Source of the DNA: Podarcis melisellensis
Taxonomy: Eukaryota
NCBI GenBank assembly: GCA_964234715.1
Contig: OZ174279.1
Length of the DNA stretch: 64,000 nt
Direction: 5' to 3' (one strand)
In this document: piece after piece, positions 1 to 55,419 of the stretch
Numbering within the stretch: position 1 is the first letter of the stretch
Layout of the letters: every line of letters starts with the position of its first letter
Made by a program: the position numbers and the translations under genes
Notes under the pieces: model-generated
The model's database searches: none
Seen by the model: the letters and a program-made list of their open reading frames with translations, nothing else
Told to the model about the DNA's origin: nothing

Positions 1-406
1 TTTGAATTATGGTGCTGGAGGAGACTCTTGAGAGTCCCATGGACTGCAAGAAGATCAAACCTATCCATTCTGAAGGAAATCAGCCCTGAGTGCTCACTGG
101 AAGGACAGATCCTGAAGCTGAGGCTCCAATACTTTGGCCACATCATGAGAAGAGAAGACTCCCTGGAAAAGACCCTGATGCTGGGAAAGATGGAGGGCAC
201 AAGGAGAAGGGGACGGCAGAGGACGAGATGGTTGGACAGTGTTCTCAAAGCTACTAACATGAGTTTGACCAAACTGCAGGAGGCAATGGAAGACAGGAGT
301 CCTTCCAGTGAGCACTCAGGGCTGATTTCCTTCAGAATGGATAGGTTTGATAGGTTCGACGATCATCCTTCTTTATGGTCCAGCTCTCACTTCCATACAT
401 CACTAC
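1..406 (+). mobile_element. BovB (RTE-clade LINE) 3' region, truncated, followed by inverted BovB fragments
   Basis: The ORF at 28 reads RVPWTARRSNLSILKEISPECSLEGQILKLRLQYFGHIMRREDSLEKTLMLGKMEG, the BovB C-terminus, and is near-identical to the copies at 7655-8600 and 35197-35883. Bases 300-406 are minus-strand BovB pieces. Confidence 0.93.
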
Positions 407-443
407 GTAAGTAAGTAAGTAAGTAAGTTAAGTAAGTAAGTAA
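407..443. repeat. (GTAA)n microsatellite
   Basis: Tandem gtaa units with one interruption. Confidence 0.95.
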
Positions 444-7654: not shown

Positions 7655-8600
7655 GTTGTTTAGTTGTTTAGTCATGTCTGACTCTTCATGACCCCATGGA
7701 CCAGAGCACGCCAGGCACTCCTGTCTTCCACTGCCTCCCGCGGCTTGGTCAAACCCATGTTAGTAGCTTCGAGAGCACTGTCCAACCATCTCATCCTCTG
7801 TCATCCCCTTCTCTTTGTGCCCTCCATCTTTCCCAACATCAGGGTCTTTTCCAGGGAGTCTTCTCTTCTCATGAGGTGGCCAAAGTATTGGAGCCTCAGC
7901 TTCACGATCTGTCCTTCCAGTGAGCACTCAGGGCTGATTTCCTTCAGAATGGATAGGTTTGTTCTTCTTGCAGTCCATGGGACTCTCAAGAGTCTCCTCC
8001 AGCACCATAATTCAAAAGCATCAATTGTTCGGCAATCAGCCTTCTTTATGGTCCAGCTCTCACTTCCATACATCACTACTGGGAAAACCATAGCTTTAAC
8101 TATACGGACCTTTGTTGGCAAGGTGATGTCTCTGCTTTTTAAGATGCTGTCTACGTTTGTCATTGCTTTTCTCCCAAGAAGCAGGCCTCTTTTAATTTCA
8201 TGGCTGCTGTCACCATCTGCAGTGATCATGAAGCCCAAGAAAGTAAAATCTCTCACTGCCTCCATTTTCCCCCATTCTATTTGCCAGGAGGTGATAGGCC
8301 CAGTGGCCATGATCTTCGTTTTTTTGATGTTGAGCTTCAGACCATATTTTGTGCTCTCCTCTTTCACCCTCATTAAAAGGTTCTTTAATTCCTCCTCACT
8401 TTCTACCATCAATGTTGTGTCATCTGCATATCTGAGGTTGTTGATATTTCTTCCGGCAATCTTAATTCAGGCTTGGGATTCATCTAGCCCAGCCTTTTGC
8501 ATGATGAATTCTGCATATAAGTTAAATAAGCAGGGAGACAATATACAGCCTTGTCATACTCCTTTCCCAATTTTGAACCAATCATTTTTTCCATATCCAG
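7655..8600 (-). mobile_element. BovB LINE, 5'-truncated, with 10-bp TSD AGGTGATATT
   Basis: The 203-aa minus-strand ORF (7801-8412) has the RT C-terminus, and NINNLRYADD is read just upstream. The tail is ACTAAACAACTAAACAAC-type. TSD copies are at 7645-7654 and 8632-8641. Confidence 0.95.
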
Positions 8601-8724
8601 TTCCATATCCATGTGATATTATTCCATATCCAGGTGATATTACAAGACCACAACTCACATAAACCCTGAGCATTGGCTGGACTGATGGGTGTTGGGAGTT
8701 CAACAGCAACCGGAAGACTGTTTT

Positions 8725-27288: not shown

Positions 27289-27539
27289 AAAGGTAAAGGT
27301 AAAGGGACCCCTGACCATTAGGTCCAGTTGCAGATGACTCTGGGCTTGCGGCGCTCATCTCACTTACTGGCCGAGGGAGCCGGTGTACAGCTTCTGGGTC
27401 ATGTGACCAACATGACTAAGCTGCTTCTGGCGAACCAGAGCAGTGCACGGAAACGCCGTTTACCTTCCCGCCGGAGTGGTACCTATTTATCTACTTGCAC
27501 TTTGACGTGCTTTTGAATTGCTAGGTTGGCAGGAGCTGG
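27289..27539 (-). mobile_element. Sauria SINE, 5'-truncated
   Basis: (ACCTTT)n tail and a conserved body (gcaagtagataaataggtac) shared with five other copies in the window. Confidence 0.92.
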
Positions 27540-31450: not shown

Positions 31451-32218
31451 TGCCCTTTAGCAGCTTTGGAAATGGAATTGTGATATATGTGAAATTAATC
31501 GTGTTACTATGCTAGGAAGCAACTGCCCAGGAATTACATCTACAGAGATATGGAATTGCTTCTACAGAACTCGTTCAATTGCTGCCTGACATCCTTTTGG
31601 CAAGAGGTGCCAGGGACTGAACCTGCTGTAAGCAAGACCTGGATTCTATTGCTAAACCACAGTCCCCAGGGGGAAATGCCAAACATTGCCACAAGCTTTT
31701 TTATACGTATTAAAGTCACTAAGGAAATCTTAAGCTACACCATCTCCCCAGCAAAGGATGGCATTCAGACTCCTGTTTCCACTGTGAAATGTCCTTCCCA
31801 TCAAGTTTGGAAGGAAGACATGTGTATCATCAACAAGCTGGTGAGATCAACTTCATGAAAATACCATGAAGTTTTTGGTGAGCCACTGATTATATCACAC
31901 ATGGTACAACATACCATTTTACTGATGAAGAACTGGAGGCATAGCTCGGTTTGGTGTAAAATGCCACGATGCAACTACAAATCCTATAAATAAGCAATAT
32001 GTTATATGATAGATCCAAGCCACATGGTGCCTTTTTATTGCAGGTTACTCTATCTGCATGTCTCCTTGAATTAAACAAATTACTTGGTTTGTCACTATCC
32101 CATTGACTTTGCTGCCAGCATTTGCTGTTTCCTCACACAACCACCTTTATCACAGTATTTCACATTGTCCCGGAAGTCAAAATTAACATGTCATTTCAGA
32201 ATGCCTGGTGGACAAAAT

Positions 32219-32752
32219 GACAGGGGACCTCCTATCTTATGGAGTTTTCCTTCGTTATTGGGTATAATCCAATGGAAAGGAAATGCATTAAATCCAGTGC
32301 TATTTTCTAGAAAAAGAGGTGCTGGAACTCACCATGAATGGTGCCCACCTGAGAGGGGCCAGACCTGGGTCCTGGTGAGTTCCAGCTGAAAAAAGCCCTG
32401 ATTAAATCCTAATTAAACTGAAGGGAACAGAGCTGGATCTACCATGAAACTAATGAAGTTTAAGCTTCAGGGCCCCTGATCCCAGACAGGGGACCTCCTA
32501 TCTTATGGAGTTTTCCTTCGTTATTGGGTATAATCCAATGGAAAGGAAATGCATTAAATCCAGTGCTATTTTCTAGAAAAAGAGGTGCTGGAACTCACCA
32601 TGAATGGTGCCCACCTGAGAGGGGCCAGACCTGGGTCCTGGTGAGTTCCAGCTGAAAAAAGCCCTGATTAAATCCTAATTAAACTGAAGGGAACAGAGCT
32701 GGATCTACCATGAAACTAATGAAGTTTAAGCTTCAGGGCCCCTGATCCCAGA
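32219..32752. repeat. Exact 266-bp tandem duplication
   Basis: 32219-32486 is repeated at 32485-32752 with no difference seen by eye and a 2-bp GA overlap at the junction. Confidence 0.95.
32295..32400. mobile_element. hAT MITE with 8-bp TSD ATTAAATC (duplicated at 32561-32666)
   Basis: TIRs CAGTGCTATTTT / AAAAAAGCCCTG. TSD at 32287-32294 and 32401-32408. Confidence 0.9.
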
Positions 32753-33131
32753 GGGGCTCCAGAAACAACTTTAGTCCATATTGCTTGAAAAAAATTGGTC
32801 TAGTAGACCCAGTTTCTTCATTCTATGAGGCACCATGTATGTACATAACATTTCTGTTATTTGTATCCACCCACATAACTTGAAAACTGTAAGGCATAGG
32901 GATTTCTTATTCACTTTATTGACTTTGACATGCGAGATAATCCAGCATGGCAATTTTAATCAAAATCTGAGATGTAATGGTTAATTAAATATATAGATAT
33001 CTGGTGATCTGTTGTGGAACAACCCCATTAAAGAAGATAACAGTGGTTACCCACTGGTTACCATTACTGGTTGCGAAGGGGCCACCATAACAGTTCAAAC
33101 TTCGGGGGCCCCCAGTGTAGGTCTGCCACTG
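32694..33131. mobile_element. Older hAT-like non-autonomous element
   Basis: Imperfect TIRs cagagctggatctac / gtaggtctgccactg and subterminal gggcccc motifs. No clean TSD. Confidence 0.45.
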
Positions 33132-33210
33132 ACTGGAACTAGGAATCTTGCATTTAATAAATTCACCAACAATAACAGACAATTCAAAGGTAAAAAACAA
33201 TGCATGCTGC

Positions 33211-34013
33211 CAGTGGCGTAGCGTGGGTTGTCAGCACCCGGGGCAAGGCAAGTAATTTGCACCCCTACCCCGTGGATTTTAGCACTCGAGTGCGAGCACA
33301 CCCCCCCCAGATGTTGCGGCCGGCCCTCCTGCACCCCCCCACGCTACGCCACTGAGGCTGGGGGCGAGCGAAGGAGCCAAGGACCCCCCCTTAAGGCTCA
33401 GCAGGAATTTATTAAATTTATTATTTGCGGAGCCCCCGCGAGCCGAGGCAGCCGAAGCCCCCTCCCCTCGGGGGCCTCCCCGCCCCCTCCTCTCCTTGGG
33501 CTGTAGGTGGAGTCCGCGCTCCGAGGCGCTCCAGATCCGGGCTTGGCGAGCGCCTCTCCTCCTCCCGGCCGGGTCCGGGGGCTTCCAGCCGTGCTCCGTC
33601 CTCCCCCCCCGGCTGAGACTTGCGCTGAGAGCCGGAGCCAGCGGTGCCCCCTTCCGCCGGGAGACCCTCGCCCGCCCGCCGGCTTCCTCTCGGAGGGTTT
33701 TGGGGAGCGCAGGGCGCGGCGAGGCCCCTCGGAGCTCTCCTCCCTCCCAGTCGGCAGAAGCAGCCACCGCCTGTGGCTGGGCCGAGGGGATGGCGGCGGC
33801 GGCGGGGTGCGGAGGCTGCCCGTGCCCGGCCAGGCGGCGGCGGCGCTGCTGCAGCGGCTGCTCCTCCTGCGAGCAGTGAGTGGAGCGCAGCAGCGGCGGC
33901 GGGGGGGAGCCCGGCAGAGGAAGGAACTTGTCCCTTCCCTCTGGACTCGTGCCCCCCCAGATGTTGCGCCCGGTGCGGCCGGCACCGCTGGCACCCCCCA
34001 CGCTACGCCACTG
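33211..34013. mobile_element. Composite hAT element carrying captured GC/CpG-rich DNA, 8-bp TSD CATGCTGC
   Basis: Outer TIRs CAGTGGCGTAGCGTGGG / CCCACGCTACGCCACTG. TSD at 33203-33210 and 34014-34021. An extra internal right end finishes at 33354. Confidence 0.9.
33355..33951. promoter_or_regulatory. CpG-island / 5'UTR-like cargo inside the hAT element
   Basis: Very GC- and CpG-rich against an AT-rich, CpG-depleted background. Contains GC boxes (ccccgccccc, cccgcccgcc) and GCG runs. Confidence 0.6.
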
Positions 34014-35009
34014 CATGCTGCAGCCTTCCCAGAGAGTATCGCTTCAACCACTGTCTCTGTGTGCATAGATGTATGTGCATGTGTGTGTGTGTACACTCTC
34101 TCTTCCTCTCTTCCAGATTTCCTGCACATGTAAGGTTGCAAGAATAAGACTTTAAGTCAAACTATCTCCCTGATATTCTAGACTTCCCCATGCAAGGAAT
34201 ATTTTTATGTGAGGAAGCATTAAACCATGTAACCCCTCACCTACAGATTCAAGTAATACTATGGCTGTGGATGTTGCTTCTGGCATGCAACTTGATAGGA
34301 GATTTCTGTACTATAACCCCTATTCTGGAGGGATCATATGGGGGAAATAAATGTTTTAATCAGCCCTGAGATGACCCACTCCCAGAGAACAAGGAAGACC
34401 TTCTGACCATGTTGGGAAACATAATCACACTTATATCTAATTTCTCACAAACTCTGTGAATGTTCTCTGAGGGTTTGACAGTTCTTTACTCTTACATTCC
34501 TGACAACTGGCACGCAATACTGTAATTTGACAATGAAAATGGTAATTGAATTGAATTTGCTCTATTTTAACTGTCAAAAGAGTAGCTCTCTCTACTGCAA
34601 GTATGTTTTTGGGTTCTTGAAAATACTTTCATGAGATGTCATTCACCTATTTAAAACCGTATAACAACAATACTAAATGTCAAAGCATTTCCAAGGACAT
34701 TTTTTCAGCATACACAGAAATTTGTAGTTTTCAAGTTCTGCTTTAATATCAAGTGCATGAATCTCACGTTGCTAAGCCATTAAATGCAATTAATAATCAA
34801 CATTTTGCCTCTGGGGTTCCATCAGCCAATCAACAACTGTGTATCTTAACTGAAGTGGTACCAACAAAAGTCAGCAGCATCTTGGGGCATTTTGGGATAC
34901 CTGTGGATCATTCCTTGCAGCAATAGCTTGAGGTAAGGCTCTAATTAAAAGCTCTTTTCTTTCTTACTGAATGTGGATATTCTGTGCCTGACCAAACTCT
35001 CCTCTGAGA

Positions 35010-45800: not shown

Positions 45801-47815
45801 GCATTGGATAATGCTGTTTAAGTGCCCTGAGTTCCTCAGAGCATGTTCTCTGAAGGGTGCACTGTGGGGTCGTTGCTGCTCATGTATGCAAGATTTCCAC
45901 AGCATCCGCACAGTGCCAACCCCACCAAATCGCCAAGTCCAGATTTTCTCCCCATTCAGCCCACATTTACCCTTCTTGTGGAAAATCCATTAGATTTTTT
46001 AAATAAATAAACAAACAAACCTGTAGCCAATTATACATTTGCAATATCTGAATGCCCCATCTGCTATATAAAGTCCTGCTTGAAAGCACCCTAAGATGCA
46101 AGATTCACATTTAATTCCTACCTGAACTGCTGATTATTTTGATGTTTTTTTTTTTTTTACCATTCTTTCAGCCACCTTGATAAATGAACTCGCAGCATAG
46201 CTACTTCGAGAGTGGAGGCTATTATTTGTATAATGGAATTGCTGAGGGAGCAGAGCCATGAATCAAGGCTTCATTATGCAAACAAGGTACACACGTATAA
46301 TGAAGACACAGTGCCTGACCCAAAAAAAGCATACTAATCACGGAATCCCTTATTACTATATTACTATTCAGAAAATGTTTATCATGACCCGCTTGAACAG
46401 AAGAACAGCCCTTATTCAGTGGAAGTCAAACACTGGAAATATCTGCCCATTAATTAGTCCAATTAATGCACAGTATATTTATCCTTAAGGGCCTTTGGTA
46501 TCACATCTGTAATGGTTGTAGTGTTGCTTTCAGGCTGTGGCATACCAACATCATTCCTCAGTTTTTCTCCAGTGGAAATGAGAACATGAGTTATGAGCTT
46601 TACACCATCAGAGGTGCTGACCCATCACGTGTCTAAACATGCAATGCAGTACGAGAGTTTGATCATCACTGAAGGAGGAAGTCCTCCCAAACAGGTGAGC
46701 TGTTGGCGTAGGATTTGTGAGCAACACAAAGTGAGCCTAGTTAACCAGGGGTTTGGACTGCAGGTATCTGAGATGCCAAGAAGCTAAACAGGAAAGTTTA
46801 TTCTCCTTCCTGTTTTTTAGTTTGAAGCATCTTGTGCTAAAAAAATCCAAAGATGCTAATAGAACTGCTTTGATACAAGATCTTCCTCCAGGCATCTTAA
46901 GCTGCTGAGGACCCTACCCCAGGCTATCTCAAAGCACACTCTTAGTTAAAAGGGGGAAACAAGAAGTAATGAGCCAGATACAATTGCAGGCCCCCCTTTC
47001 TTGGAGCCTTCTGACCTTGAAAAGTCTTAAAGCTGTGCTCCCCGTGAAAAATAACTTTTCCTTAGTGCTGAGTATGTGCATTGCTCCACAGACAAACAAT
47101 AAAAGCGCATGCCTTGATCATTTATCCTCCTCTGAGGCCTATAAACCAGAAGCAAATGTAGCAAAGGCAGAAGATTAACAGTGGAAGTGTAACACACCAC
47201 ATTTTTCACAATGTTTGCTCTTCAGGGACAATTAGTAAATGTCACTAATTGCTAGGCATTCGTAAAAAAAAAAAAAAAACGCTGCAGTCCCATCCGACCC
47301 TGACTTTGTTTGACTCATAAGCAAATCTCCCAGCAGTAAAATGACAGAGGCAGGATCTTGGGGCACATGATTCAGTAAGAGATAGGATTTAAAGGAATTC
47401 ACCATTCAGGCTACGCGTACTAAACGACAGTGAAACTTAGGCAGCCTCTGCAAAGACCATACAAAATAATCTCTGCCTGATCCAAGTGGGATTGTCAACT
47501 GTCTCACAGGGAATTCTGTTTCCTCAAGGAGAAAAGCAGGCAGGAGGCAAACTGTCCCTCTAAAAACAGAGATGAGGCAACTGCTAAATTCAGCATCTAG
47601 GCTTGAATAAGAATGCAAAATGCAGCCAATCTCTCTTTTCCCCACTGGTCTTGGGCTAAAAGCTTAGGACTGCTGCTGAAACATATCTGCTACATATTCA
47701 ACCATTAAGCACAGAATTATAGAAGGGGCAGCCAACATACCCAGAACATTATATATATTCTCAAACAGCGTATAAGATCTGTTATTTAATCCTGCATCCT
47801 ACATTGACTATGTTA

Positions 47816-48167
47816 AAGGTAAAGAGACCCCTGACCATTAGGTCCAGTCGCAGACGACTCTGGGGTTGCGTCACTCATCTCACTTTATTGGCCGAGGGAG
47901 CCGGCGTACAGCTTCCAGGTCATGTGGCCAGCATGACTGAGCTACTTCTGGTGAACCAGAGCAGCGCACGGAAACTCCGTTTACCTTCCCGCCAGGGCAG
48001 TACCTATTTATCTACTTGCACTTTTGATGTGCTTTCAAACTGCTAGGTTGGCAGGAGCAGGGACCGAGCAACGGGAGCTCACCCAGTCACGGGGATTCGA
48101 ACCGCCAACCTTCTGATCGGCAAGTCCTAGGCTCTGTGGTTTAATCCACAGCGCCACCCGCGTCCCT
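47816..48167 (-). mobile_element. Sauria SINE, full length
   Basis: Reverse complement of the 39544-39895 family. TATGTTA direct repeats at 47809-47815 and 48172-48178. Confidence 0.95.
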
Positions 48168-49377
48168 GAGATATGTTAGGTCGTATTAGGAAAAGTGCCT
48201 ATGCCATGCAGAAGACTCCTGTATAAAATCATACAAGCCTTGAACAAATCTTATTTCGTGATTGCAATGGTGTAGTCTCTCAAAAATTGGTGTGGTTGTG
48301 GTAGTTGTTGTTCAGTCTGTGATTTCATTTCACCCTCTAAAATCCTACTTCTTAGCCAAAACTCCTGGAGTAAACATCCCTTCATATAAAACAAAAAGAA
48401 GGTTCACTGAAACTCCAGTGCAAGTGAACATTTCTTTGCATGCAGTTCTCCTGGGCCTTAATGTTCAAAGAGGATATATTTAGGCAAAGGACAACACTAA
48501 ATCATTTCAGCTAGAAGATGTTACAGTGACATTCCGCCGTGTATCTTTTTAAGATGCGGAGGTGCTTTCATTCAGTGCAACTGATTCCTGGAGGACACAT
48601 GGCACAACCCACACAGATCCACTACAGATCCACATACAGTTGCGACAAAGTGTGGGCTGTGCACAGATTTCAGAGCCTGTGTGGGGAAAGAGCAATGTTA
48701 GCATGTAAAAAATATATATGGAAAAACCCCCATAGTGCATCCTCCAGACATTCTTTTCATCATCATCCTTTAGTTACTGCTACCCACTGCTCTGCTTGTG
48801 TGCTAAAGCACAGCCCCAGGAGACCAGGAGTCTCCCATGTGAATATAAGACTGAATGGAGGTGGCAGTAAGGAGGCTGCTCACCAAGGAAGAATGACGTT
48901 GACTAAGATGAACTCACAACTTCGTGGAAAGAAGCCTGCAAGCCCTCTCTTGCACCAGGCAGATTTAGGCTGCGATCTCAGCCAAACTCTCCACATGAGC
49001 ACCCAGTTTCTCTGACTTTTGGAGGGGGAAAGGGACTCTTCCATTACACTATTGCCGCATTGCCCCCAAGTGAATGTCATGGACCACAGTTCAGTGTTTC
49101 TCCTTTCCTAATAGCTTGGCCTGAACTTTAGCCGCGGCGAGTACAGACTCAGTCATCATTATATGCAATATCTGGTTCCAAAACACTCCCTCCAAGCAGC
49201 AATTAGCATGAATGTTGTTGCTGAAAAATGCGCTGCCTGATCCCTCCTGGGAAGAAACAGATGTGTCTATGGATTAACCTTGAGCCAAAACCACCCACAA
49301 TTTCACACAAACATTTGCCCCACATGCTTCCCTTTCACCAAGCTTTTTGGTGAGAAGATTCACCTATTGGTTTAGCT

Positions 49378-52500: not shown

Positions 52501-52865
52501 TGTCCAAGGGAATGGGGGCAATTTGAGGGCCCCCAGCTGCCTCCACCCCACTGGCTGGCAGCCAGGCGAACTCTGGTCCTTGAAACAACATCAAAACAGT
52601 GGCACACAGCTTCAGAAGCCTTCAGAAGCTTGAGCACGCCTCAATCAGCAGAGTGAATGGCATGCAACAGAAGTGGCAGACAGAGGCATACGTAAAGCAT
52701 ATTTACAAGCAGTTTATTCAGCATAGTTCAGGACAAAGAAAAACATGTCTGCTTTCTTTCATGTCCAAGAGCAGGAAGCACTAAGCAAAAGCTATACACA
52801 GACGGAAGTTCCCAGCAAGCTGTGCTGGAATGTAAACAGACATTTAACATACAACAATCCACATA

Positions 52866-53351
52866 CCGCATTTTTCGCCCTATAGGACGCACTTTTTCCC
52901 CTCCAAAAATGAAGGGGAAATGTTTGTGCATCCTATGGGGTGAATGCAAGCTTTTGCTGAAGCCTGGAGAGCGAGAGGGGTCGGTGCGCACTGACCCCTC
53001 TCGCTCTCCAGGCTTCAGGAAGCTCTCCACAAGCCGTGGGAGAGCTGCCTGCACCCAGAAGACTGGGGCGCGCTGAGCTCAGCACGCCCCAGGCTTCGGG
53101 CTTCGCGCAGCTCTCCCACCTCTTGCGGAGAGCTATCTGTACCCAGAAGCCTGGGGCACGCTGATCTCAGCGCCCCCAGGCTTCGGGCATCGCACAACTC
53201 TCCCACGGCCTGCAGATAGCAGTTGTTCTGGGGGCTGGGGTCAGGCGAAGCTCGGGCCTGGGGGGGGGAAATATTTTTTTTTCTTTATTTCCCCCCAAAA
53301 AAACTAGGTGTGCCCTATGGGCCGGTGCGCCCTATGGGGCGAAAAATACGG
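52866..53351. mobile_element. Tc1/mariner (pogo-like) MITE with internal hairpins
   Basis: TIRs CCG(C/T)ATTTTTCGCCC(T/C)ATAGG, TA on both flanks and a CpG-rich interior. Confidence 0.9.
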
Positions 53352-55419
53352 TATCTGTTTCTCAATATCGTAACACTTACAGCGGTTGCTCCTCAGTACT
53401 CTCCAAAGTGACAGAAAAGGGGTCTCAGGATAGTGTCGTCATGAGTGCTGGACTACAGCAGCTGCTTGAGGATAATGCCTACTGCTGCTCTGTTTGCACT
53501 CTGGAGCGGGACCAAGGGCACCTTACTACTTCTGTCACTATGGCATAATAGGGAACTGCTGCACAGATCTCTGCTGTGGTGCAGCACAACCTCTTTGGCT
53601 GAAACCCAGCAAGAATCAAGTGATACTAGGAGCTAAAAGGGTCCCATTTGGTTTTACAAGCTGCTGATACTGACTTGGCTTCTCAGTCTGAGCAATCCCT
53701 TTTGGGTACAGGCTGAGTTGCTCATAGAATTGTTTCATTTCCTGTCATGACCATCTGCCTTCCACCAGGCCATCAACCCTGACACCCACCACAAGATACC
53801 AACCCCATCAACTGAGAAATTAACTGCCTTAGAGAGTACTTAATGCCACCTACTAGGTGTGTCACCATCAGTGTGTGTATTCTTTTCTGAAGCAAGATAA
53901 TGACATCCGGTACAGCTACACAAAATATGAGCTACCATTGTCTAGCTTCCTCTTTCCCTTTCAGCTGCTGCTTATAATAGCCCCCAAATTGCTTTTTTAA
54001 AAGTAGTTTTCATTAATGTAAAATCATGTGCAGACAAACAAAAAAGTAATCAAAGTTACAAAATATGGGAGCAGTACAGAAGCTGAATTTTCCAAATAAA
54101 TAGAGAGCACACAATGCATAATGAAAGCCAAATTTCACAGTTTGGTAGAAAACAGCTTTGCTTATCTGAAATGTTCTGGGTCTTCCTCAGCCTTAGAAAT
54201 ACGGAGTTTGTGGATTCCTTTCTCTGGGGTTGCCAGAATCCACATATTTCAAATTTGCTTTTTAAACTCCTCTTGATTTAAAGGACTGAAATCTGGTTCA
54301 TACACCTGAAGCTCCCATCACAGGTCTATATAAGTCATGGTTCCATGTGCCCACCCTCCCATCACAAGTCTGACAGTGCTGCATACTCCCAGAGATACCT
54401 GCAAGGGACTCACTGGAAATAAGAAGCAGTCCTGAGAGTATTTTGTTTTCAAAATACCTGCCTAGGGGAATGAAAGATTGAAGCTCACACCAGGATTTCC
54501 CATTTCCATTAACAAGATTGAGTGCTTGTGACCCTCGCCACAATGCCTGTGGAATATAAAGCTGGGATGTAGCTAATTGTGCCACTATGCATAGTTAATT
54601 ATATTAGTGAATGGCAAAGATAATGGGCACCCTGCAACTTTTTATGGTGTAAACATTCTGCAAAGTCCACATTCAGTCTCTAGCAGTTTGCTTCATTGCT
54701 AATTAGAAGCTCTTCAAGCCTGTATTAAGAACCATTCCTTCGGGGGGCTGGAGAGAAATATGTGGGAAAGAGCACTATGCGTTAGTGATTTTGAAGGATT
54801 TGGTGATTAAACGAACATAAAATTTGAGTGGGCGGCAATAAGAAAATCCATGTTGATCCACGCAAGACAATTGTTGTGGCAGCTTCCTTCTGACGGATGA
54901 TTTCTGCATCAACACATTGGATAGATTCTAGAACACATGGCTAGCAGCTGAACAGTTAATTGACATATGGAATATCTATCTAGGGACTATTATTGTGATC
55001 TGCTAAGCCAGCCACAGTCTTGGAGAGGCACAAGGGAGAATTCTGCAGCACAGATGCAGAAAGACGCATGGTAATTACAGTATGTTGTAGAGCAAAAGTT
55101 TAAAAGTTCAAAAAACCCAGCAGCAGACATGCTATGGAAATCCACTGGGAGCCAGTTCTTTCAAAATGTTTGGCTAGAGGTAGCCCAAAATGTGTAGTGC
55201 TACTAGAAAATTCTGTTGGCTCAAAATCGTAAGGACAGGTGCCTGGGCTTGCTTGTGAAGTTGTTTCGAATGCTGTTAGTCTCAGGATGTTACAAACATT
55301 ATATCACGTTACATTTATTTGAAGCAATTCTGCTCCCAGGTAAGAACTGTTTTAGGTTTCTAAACTCTTCCATCCACCAAGAACAGCCTTTCCTGACCTA
55401 GTACTTGCTGGCCAAGAGT

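What the first reader, a model, noticed from the sequence alone, without database searches (positions are those of the whole stretch)
33203..34021. Composite hAT transposon that appears to have captured a host CpG-island / first-exon-like fragment
Seen: a complete 144-bp MITE (33211-33354, both TIRs), then about 600 bp of extremely GC/CpG-rich unique DNA, then a second, diverged right end of the same MITE (33952-34013). The 8-bp TSD CATGCTGC flanks only the outermost ends, and the inner right end is followed by AGGCTGGG. So the unit that moved was MITE + cargo + second end. Established: 8-bp TSDs and CAG-starting TIRs indicate hAT, and TIR elements can carry host DNA (Pack-MULE / Pack-TIR type capture). 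Inference: this is a mobile CpG island placed into an AT-rich non-coding region. Its CpGs are not depleted, so it is either very recent or protected from methylation. 33910-33950 weakly resembles the MITE interior, so the right end may be a second MITE with a decayed left TIR.
Basis: partly seen in the sequence, partly recalled or inferred. Interest (0 to 1): 0.8.

Follow-up and report, generated by a model that had tools for sequence, protein, structure and literature searches.

The report
Two-MITE transposon carrying a CpG island
An 803-base mobile unit, made of two small hAT-type transposon copies around a CpG-island, first-exon-like piece of DNA, sits in AT-rich non-coding lizard DNA; this is a known kind of gene-fragment capture, and the source gene could not be found here.

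Summary
The 17-nt end CAGTGGCGTAGCGTGGG occurs three times without a mismatch (33211, 33354, 34013) and nowhere else in the window. The 8-bp duplication CATGCTGC lies flush against the two outermost ends only. Between them are 536-597 bp with GC 0.73 and CpG o/e 0.74 (flanks 0.05-0.16). This stretch holds its only ATG (33790, not 33792), a 28-codon open frame and its only GTRAGT (33876).

New here:
- The right part is probably a full-length but indel-ridden second MITE (33891-34013) in direct orientation.
- No parent copy lies within about 30 kb on either side.
- The left TE/cargo junction falls exactly at a TIR end.
- The same 15-nt terminus is found on six eukaryote-like metagenome contigs.

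Best reading (about 0.5): a composite or macrotransposon, in which the outer ends of two linked MITEs moved the promoter region and first exon between them. Main rival (about 0.3): gap repair or conversion at a MITE already resident at this site.

Other notes from this scan, unchecked here, report many similar elements elsewhere in this genome. Verdict: new member of a known kind (animal Pack-TIR / hAT).

The parts
33203..33210 (.). left copy of the 8-bp target-site duplication CATGCTGC
   Evidence: D8
33211..33354 (+). MITE1, a complete 144-bp non-autonomous element with perfect 17-nt TIRs; its left subterminal is of 'type B' and its right of 'type A'
   Evidence: (I2)
33338..33354 (-). inner right TIR of MITE1; followed by AGGCTGGG, not by the TSD
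33355..33890 (+). cargo: unique CpG-island DNA (GC about 0.75, CpG o/e about 0.75, two CCGCCC boxes), with no copy elsewhere in the window
33790..33875 (+). first-exon-like open frame: the only ATG of the cargo (G at -3, G at +4), Met-Ala4 start, 28 codons plus 2 nt
33876..33881 (+). GTGAGT, the only GTRAGT in the cargo (splice-donor-like); it lies 10-15 nt before the candidate decayed left TIR and could partly derive from it
   Evidence: direct reading
33891..34013 (+). MITE2 in direct orientation. The right 63 nt (33951-34013) are solid and carry a 9-bp tandem insertion. The left half is indel-ridden, with a candidate decayed left TIR CAGCGGCGGCGGGGG at 33891-33905
   Evidence: (D1, D3)
33997..34013 (-). 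outer right TIR, 17/17
   Evidence: (I3)
34014..34021 (.). right copy of the TSD CATGCTGC
   Evidence: D8

Best explanation
This is a composite ('macro') transposon. At a donor locus, two copies of one hAT-type MITE family sat in direct orientation on either side of a gene's CpG-island promoter and first exon. MITE1 lay about 435 bp upstream of the ATG. MITE2 lay in intron 1, about 15 bp past the splice donor, and its left end was already decayed. A transposase supplied in trans paired the left end of MITE1 with the right end of MITE2, skipping MITE1's intact right end. It cut out the 803-bp unit and inserted it at CATGCTGC in AT-rich non-coding DNA, producing the 8-bp duplication. Shown: three perfect ends, a TSD at the outermost ends only, an inner end without a TSD, cargo that meets CpG-island criteria and has a first-exon layout, and no parent nearby. 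Inferred: the donor locus, the host origin of the cargo, movement as one unit, and that the event is recent or the island is unmethylated (undepleted CpGs, perfect TSD and TIRs). At its new site the island could act as an ectopic promoter; no data on that were obtained.
For: - Perfect 17-nt TIR three times and an 8/8 TSD at the outer ends only.
- The MITE1/cargo junction is exactly at the last TIR base (33354|33355). That fits a transposase-made insertion junction carried over from a donor locus. Gap-filling breakpoints are instead biased to TE interiors (PMC8277862).
- No copy of the cargo or the MITE in the other ~63 kb of the window (blastn, word size 7). Gap-filled single-copy Pack-TIRs mostly have their parent within 15 kb in cis, while transposed ones have distal parents.
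- The second element is colinear with MITE1 along its length. The semi-global score of 16 exceeds all 147 sliding cargo windows (maximum 10), and only 1 of 500 dinucleotide shuffles reaches it under gap-tolerant scoring. Its left half has the family's 'type B' subterminal pattern.
- The terminus is a real family end: the first 15 nt are invariant on six eukaryote-like metagenome contigs with other interiors. One complete 1657-bp element there has flanks compatible with an 8-bp TSD.
- Macrotransposition by the outer ends of two linked, directly oriented hAT elements is documented in maize Ac/Ds (papers PMC9910405 and PMC4270019, listed; the mechanism is from established knowledge).
Against: - No donor or parental locus was seen, and no empty orthologous site was seen.
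- The homology of MITE2's left half is not significant under gap-strict scoring (97 of 500 shuffles reach it; the local alignment is at chance level).
- In primates, 94% of the single-copy animal Pack-TIRs tested arose in situ at a pre-existing TE, which sets a prior against movement.
- The TSD CATGCTGC does not fit the usual hAT nTnnnnAn preference.
- No homologue of the 28-codon exon-like frame was found.
Confidence: 0.5

Rival explanations
1. In-situ capture without movement of the composite (abortive gap repair, template switching or ectopic conversion). A solo MITE had inserted at CATGCTGC. After a transposase-induced or replication-associated break, repair synthesis switched to another MITE copy lying beside a CpG island elsewhere. 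It copied through that copy's end into its flank (or through a MITE-island-MITE template) and rejoined the resident element's right part.
For: - It gives the same end product with the resident's TSD.
- It is the dominant origin of single-copy animal Pack-TIRs (PMC8277862).
- The two right ends differ (85% identity plus a 9-bp insertion), as expected if they come from different family members.
- A C-run at the cargo/MITE2 boundary (33951-33958) could serve as microhomology.
Against: - No parent within ~30 kb on either side, whereas gap-filled cases are mostly within 15 kb in cis.
- The left junction is exactly terminal, not internal.
- If MITE2 is full-length, the template must itself have been a two-MITE arrangement, so this route needs more coincidences than direct transposition.
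Confidence: 0.3
2. The GC-rich interior is the standard internal sequence of a longer multicopy non-autonomous hAT family, captured long ago or not derived from a host gene at all. This copy would then be an ordinary family member with an internal duplication of the end.
For: - Elements sharing this terminus carry very different interiors.
- A follow-up note on another element in this genome reports a multicopy gene-carrying hAT (s1-494028; not checked here).
- No protein homologue of the exon-like frame was found.
Against: - No second copy in 64 kb.
- The interior holds a complete MITE with an intact inner TIR, which is not expected of a family consensus.
- The single ATG, the open frame and the single GTGAGT in the order of a first exon; the expected number of GTRAGT by composition is about 0.07 (my estimate from the counts).
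Confidence: 0.12
3. A native CpG island of a local gene or lncRNA that happens to be bracketed by two independent MITE insertions.
For: hAT elements tend to insert near the 5' ends of genes (established knowledge), so MITEs beside a promoter are plausible.
Against: Independent insertions would each carry their own TSD. Instead, MITE1 has CATGCTGC on its left and AGGCTGGG on its right, and the identical 8-mer reappears only after the far end. No exons or gene-like ORFs were seen in the window.
Confidence: 0.03

Closest known systems
Animal Pack-TIRs, mostly hAT (Tan et al. 2021, Nat Commun, PMC8277862)
   Same: TIR-transposon ends enclosing non-TE DNA, flanked by a TSD. hAT is the commonest carrier (208 of 370), and one frog hAT case carries a 5'UTR fragment.
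   Different: Here a complete MITE plus a second copy flank the cargo and the left junction is exactly terminal. Most reported single-copy cases have internal breakpoints, a parent in cis and an in-situ origin. No parental copy was verified here.
Maize Ac/Ds macrotransposons and alternative transposition (Huang and Dooner 2008, from my own knowledge; PMC9910405 and PMC4270019, listed)
   Same: The outer ends of two closely linked hAT elements in direct orientation are used together. The intervening host DNA moves with them, and the 8-bp TSD flanks the whole unit.
   Different: Those events were seen genetically in plants with kilobase-sized elements. This is a natural fossil in a vertebrate built from 123-144-bp MITEs, and the donor site is unknown.
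Plant Pack-MULEs and Pack-TYPE elements (PMC8903248, listed)
   Same: Non-autonomous TIR elements carrying gene fragments. A preference for GC-rich 5' gene parts is described for rice Pack-MULEs (my own knowledge).
   Different: A different superfamily (Mutator, 9-10-bp TSD, long TIRs), and usually a single element whose interior is replaced, not two elements.
P-element end-bypass transduction
   Same: The proper end is skipped and a downstream end is used, so flanking DNA is mobilised.
   Different: Here the downstream end is a bona fide second copy of the same family, not an accidental look-alike.

Membership tests
hAT superfamily, non-autonomous (MITE) | 8-bp target-site duplication | tested here: met
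   CATGCTGC at 33203-33210 and 34014-34021. The L005 element has flanks compatible with 8 bp, with 3 of 3 visible bases matching.
hAT superfamily, non-autonomous (MITE) | Short TIRs (about 10-25 nt) starting YARNG / CAG | tested here: met
   The 17-nt TIR starts CAGTG. Its first 15 nt are invariant across 10 ends from the window and from metagenome contigs.
hAT superfamily, non-autonomous (MITE) | Target preference nTnnnnAn | tested here: not met
   CATGCTGC (reverse complement GCAGCATG) lacks T at position 2 and A at position 7. This is a single insertion and the preference is only statistical, so it is weak counter-evidence.
hAT superfamily, non-autonomous (MITE) | Mobilised by a transposase with BED and hAT dimerisation domains that shares the TIRs | not testable with these tools
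   No transposase ORF in the window or in contigs L001-L006. The host genome cannot be searched here.
Pack-TIR (captured host DNA) | Non-TE DNA between TE ends, within one TSD | tested here: met
Pack-TIR (captured host DNA) | A parental copy of the cargo elsewhere in the genome | not testable with these tools
   Absent from the 64-kb window. Protein and peptide searches were blank. No tool searches this genome.
Macrotransposon / composite of two linked elements | Two elements of one family in direct orientation around host DNA | tested here: inconclusive
   MITE1 is complete and MITE2's right 63 nt are solid. MITE2's left half is supported under gap-tolerant scoring (0 of 147 windows; 1 of 500 shuffles) but not under strict scoring; the subterminal type matches.
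Macrotransposon / composite of two linked elements | TSD at the outer ends only; inner ends without it | tested here: met
Macrotransposon / composite of two linked elements | Empty orthologous site, or a donor locus with the same arrangement | not tested
CpG island (Gardiner-Garden/Frommer; Takai-Jones) | Over 500 bp, GC at least 0.55, CpG o/e at least 0.65 | tested here: met
   33211-34013: 803 bp, GC 0.72, o/e 0.74. Cargo alone: GC 0.73, o/e 0.74.
Protein-coding first exon | ATG in good context, open frame, GT donor, and homology to a known N-terminus | tested here: inconclusive
   The form is met. No homologue was found; the searches were limited by the 30-aa low-complexity query and by length windows.

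The most novel reading that the evidence does not exclude
In this lizard lineage an active hAT MITE family repeatedly lands on both sides of CpG-island promoters, following the hAT preference for the 5' ends of genes. Pairs of such copies are then mobilised as composites. This would scatter portable, possibly methylation-resistant promoters with a first exon and splice donor through introns and intergenic DNA, making a vertebrate counterpart of the plant Pack-MULE bias for GC-rich 5' gene ends. The many unchecked first-reader notes of 'Pack-hAT' elements with different CpG-island cargo in this genome would be instances of it.
Probability: 0.25. Interest if true: 0.75.

Novelty: new member of a known kind. 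Interest (0 to 1): 0.45.

Why it matters
If the composite really moved, it is a clean natural example in a vertebrate of two MITEs acting together to relocate a promoter, a first exon and a splice donor. That is ready-made material for new transcription start sites and chimeric transcripts. It would also point to a simple mechanism, paired ends around promoters, for the apparent excess of CpG-island cargo in this genome's hAT elements. As a single case without its parent it is a modest addition to known Pack-TIR biology.

Tried and rejected
So there is no read-level view of empty or filled sites in organisms A-H, or of the RNA-guess runs listed.
- Parent-gene search. The 245-aa minus-strand ORF through the cargo gave no hit and no encoding contig. 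The 30-aa exon peptide against 1.8 billion representatives gave only P0001, a translated tandem repeat and therefore spurious. PDB gave nothing. The 127-aa ORF restricted to region 88-127 gave nothing among proteins of 70-222 aa; longer parents could not be reached.
- Rfam: no match over 32000-34053.
- Literature: the TIR string is in no paper. It is not among the Anolis hAT families of PMC3014272. No paper on such elements in wall lizards was found.
- A strict two-TIR pattern in the metagenome contigs found nothing.
- The Arthrobacter hit L007 is taken as a chance 20-mer match.
- The search of earlier findings by sequence was blank, which per the operators means nothing.
- Rejected: nested insertion of MITE1 into a longer element, because MITE1 has no TSD of its own; and a native island bracketed by independent insertions, because of the TSD geometry.

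Full report
**Observation.**
- The 17-nt end CAGTGGCGTAGCGTGGG occurs three times without a mismatch: 33211-33227 (+), 33338-33354 (-) and 33997-34013 (-). Even with up to 3 mismatches it occurs nowhere else in the 64-kb window (0.01 matches expected, and pairs I2 and I3).
- The 8-mer CATGCTGC abuts the outermost ends (33203-33210 and 34014-34021). The inner right end is followed by AGGCTGGG. An 8/8 match in exactly that position has a chance of about 1.5e-5.
- MITE1 (33211-33354, 144 bp) folds as a TIR stem.
- The second right end aligns to MITE1's last 53 nt over 33951-34013, with a 9-bp tandem insertion.

**Cargo.** Positions 33355-33951 have GC 0.729 and CpG o/e 0.74.
- For comparison, the flanks have o/e 0.16 and 0.05, and the window as a whole 0.25. 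This is the only strong CpG island in the window.
- MITE1 itself has o/e 0.67. The whole unit is therefore either young or unmethylated; perfect TIRs and a perfect TSD fit a young age.
- On the + strand the cargo has exactly one ATG, at 33790 (G at -3 and +4, then four Ala codons). A 28-codon open frame follows, and then the only GTRAGT, at 33876. The minus strand has no ATG and no donor motif. There are two CCGCCC boxes.
- From base composition I estimate about 0.07 GTRAGT expected by chance, so the first-exon layout is unlikely to be accidental.
- One caveat: the donor lies 10-15 nt before a stretch that can be read as a decayed TIR.

**The second element.**
- A local alignment of MITE1's left 91 nt against the cargo scores no better than shuffles.
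- A colinear semi-global alignment to 33873-33951 scores 16. The 147 sliding cargo windows average 4.8 (maximum 10), and only 1 of 500 dinucleotide shuffles reaches 16. A second gap-tolerant scheme gives the same result and an intermediate scheme is weaker (10 of 500 shuffles). Under gap-strict scoring the signal is lost, with 97 of 500 shuffles reaching it.
- The aligned left part shows the family's 'type B' subterminal pattern (CCCGG..CA..AAG..TTG..CCC). That pattern is also seen at MITE1's left end and at one end of a metagenomic relative.
- I therefore read 33891-34013 as a full-length but indel-ridden second MITE in direct orientation. Its degenerate left TIR would be CAGCGGCGGCGGGGG at 33891-33905, and the cargo would be 536 bp (33355-33890). 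Confidence in this reading is moderate.

**Family.** No other copy lies in the window.
- A scan of metagenome contigs for the 20-nt terminus found six eukaryote-like contigs, L001-L006, four of them from one sample. The genome-collection scan gave one bacterial hit, taken as chance.
- Across all ten ends the first 15 nt are invariant. The interiors differ, and none carries a transposase ORF.
- These contigs share nothing else with the window.
- L005 holds a complete 1657-bp element. The three visible left-flank bases equal the last three of the right 8-mer.
- The terminus is thus a genuine, widespread transposon end. Assignment to hAT rests on the 8-bp TSD and the CAG-type TIR. The TSD does not fit nTnnnnAn, and no transposase could be linked.

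**Mechanism.** Tan et al. (PMC8277862) separate two kinds of animal Pack-TIR. In-situ gap-filled ones have the parent in cis within 15 kb, internal breakpoints with microhomology, and an orthologous solo TE in outgroups. Transposed ones have distal parents and no orthologous TE.
- Here the left junction is exactly the last base of a complete MITE, as expected of an insertion junction inherited from a donor locus.
- No parent lies within about 30 kb on either side.
- Together with a second, directly oriented copy, this matches the macrotransposon geometry known from maize Ac/Ds. The papers were listed; the mechanism is from established knowledge.
- I put this reading at about 0.5.
- Repair or conversion at a resident solo MITE, templated by a MITE-flanked island elsewhere, gives the same product and remains at about 0.3.
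- A standard multicopy interior is at about 0.12, and a native island at about 0.03.

**What could not be done.**
I kept those places out of every later search.
- One search shows that eight coded organisms hold 28-65% of the sampled words of the stretch, and that some runs guessed to be RNA hold 7-17%. Which part they hold is unknown.
- The parental gene was not identified.
- Rfam gave nothing.

**Context.** Unchecked scan notes list a dozen or so 'Pack-hAT' elements with different CpG-island or first-exon cargo in this same genome. One follow-up calls the host a wall lizard and reports a multicopy gene-carrying hAT. I tested none of these. They raise the odds that this is one instance of a recurrent process. 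No paper in the library describes such elements in lacertids.

**Verdict.** The composite-transposon reading is favoured but not proven. It is a new member of a known kind, with interest 0.45.

Noticed in passing
window 52864-53353: A Tc1/mariner-type MITE: about 27-33-nt TIRs (CCGCATTTTTCGCCC...), TA on both sides (52864-5 and 53352-3), and an interior made of nested GC-rich palindromes (arms of 34-72 nt). It accounts for the second CpG-rich spot of the window.
   Followed up: partly
L001-L006 (metagenome contigs; L002-L005 from sample Ga0124853): The same invariant 15-nt terminus CAGTGGCGTAGCGTG is found on non-autonomous elements in other, unidentified eukaryote DNA that shares nothing else with the window. 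This suggests a widespread or horizontally spread TIR family. L002 and L005 share about 77% identity over about 850 bp of interior.
   Followed up: partly
window 28-414 and 7688-8662: BovB/RTE-type LINE reverse-transcriptase C-terminal fragments (ORFs of 128 aa and, on the minus strand, 203 aa). No host exon-like ORFs of 110 aa or more were seen anywhere in the window.
   Followed up: no
It was left out of all later searches.
   Followed up: no
window 47801-48100 and 27301-27500: Borderline CpG-rich 200-bp windows (GC 0.55, o/e about 0.65). No inverted repeats were found around 47300-48600.
   Followed up: partly
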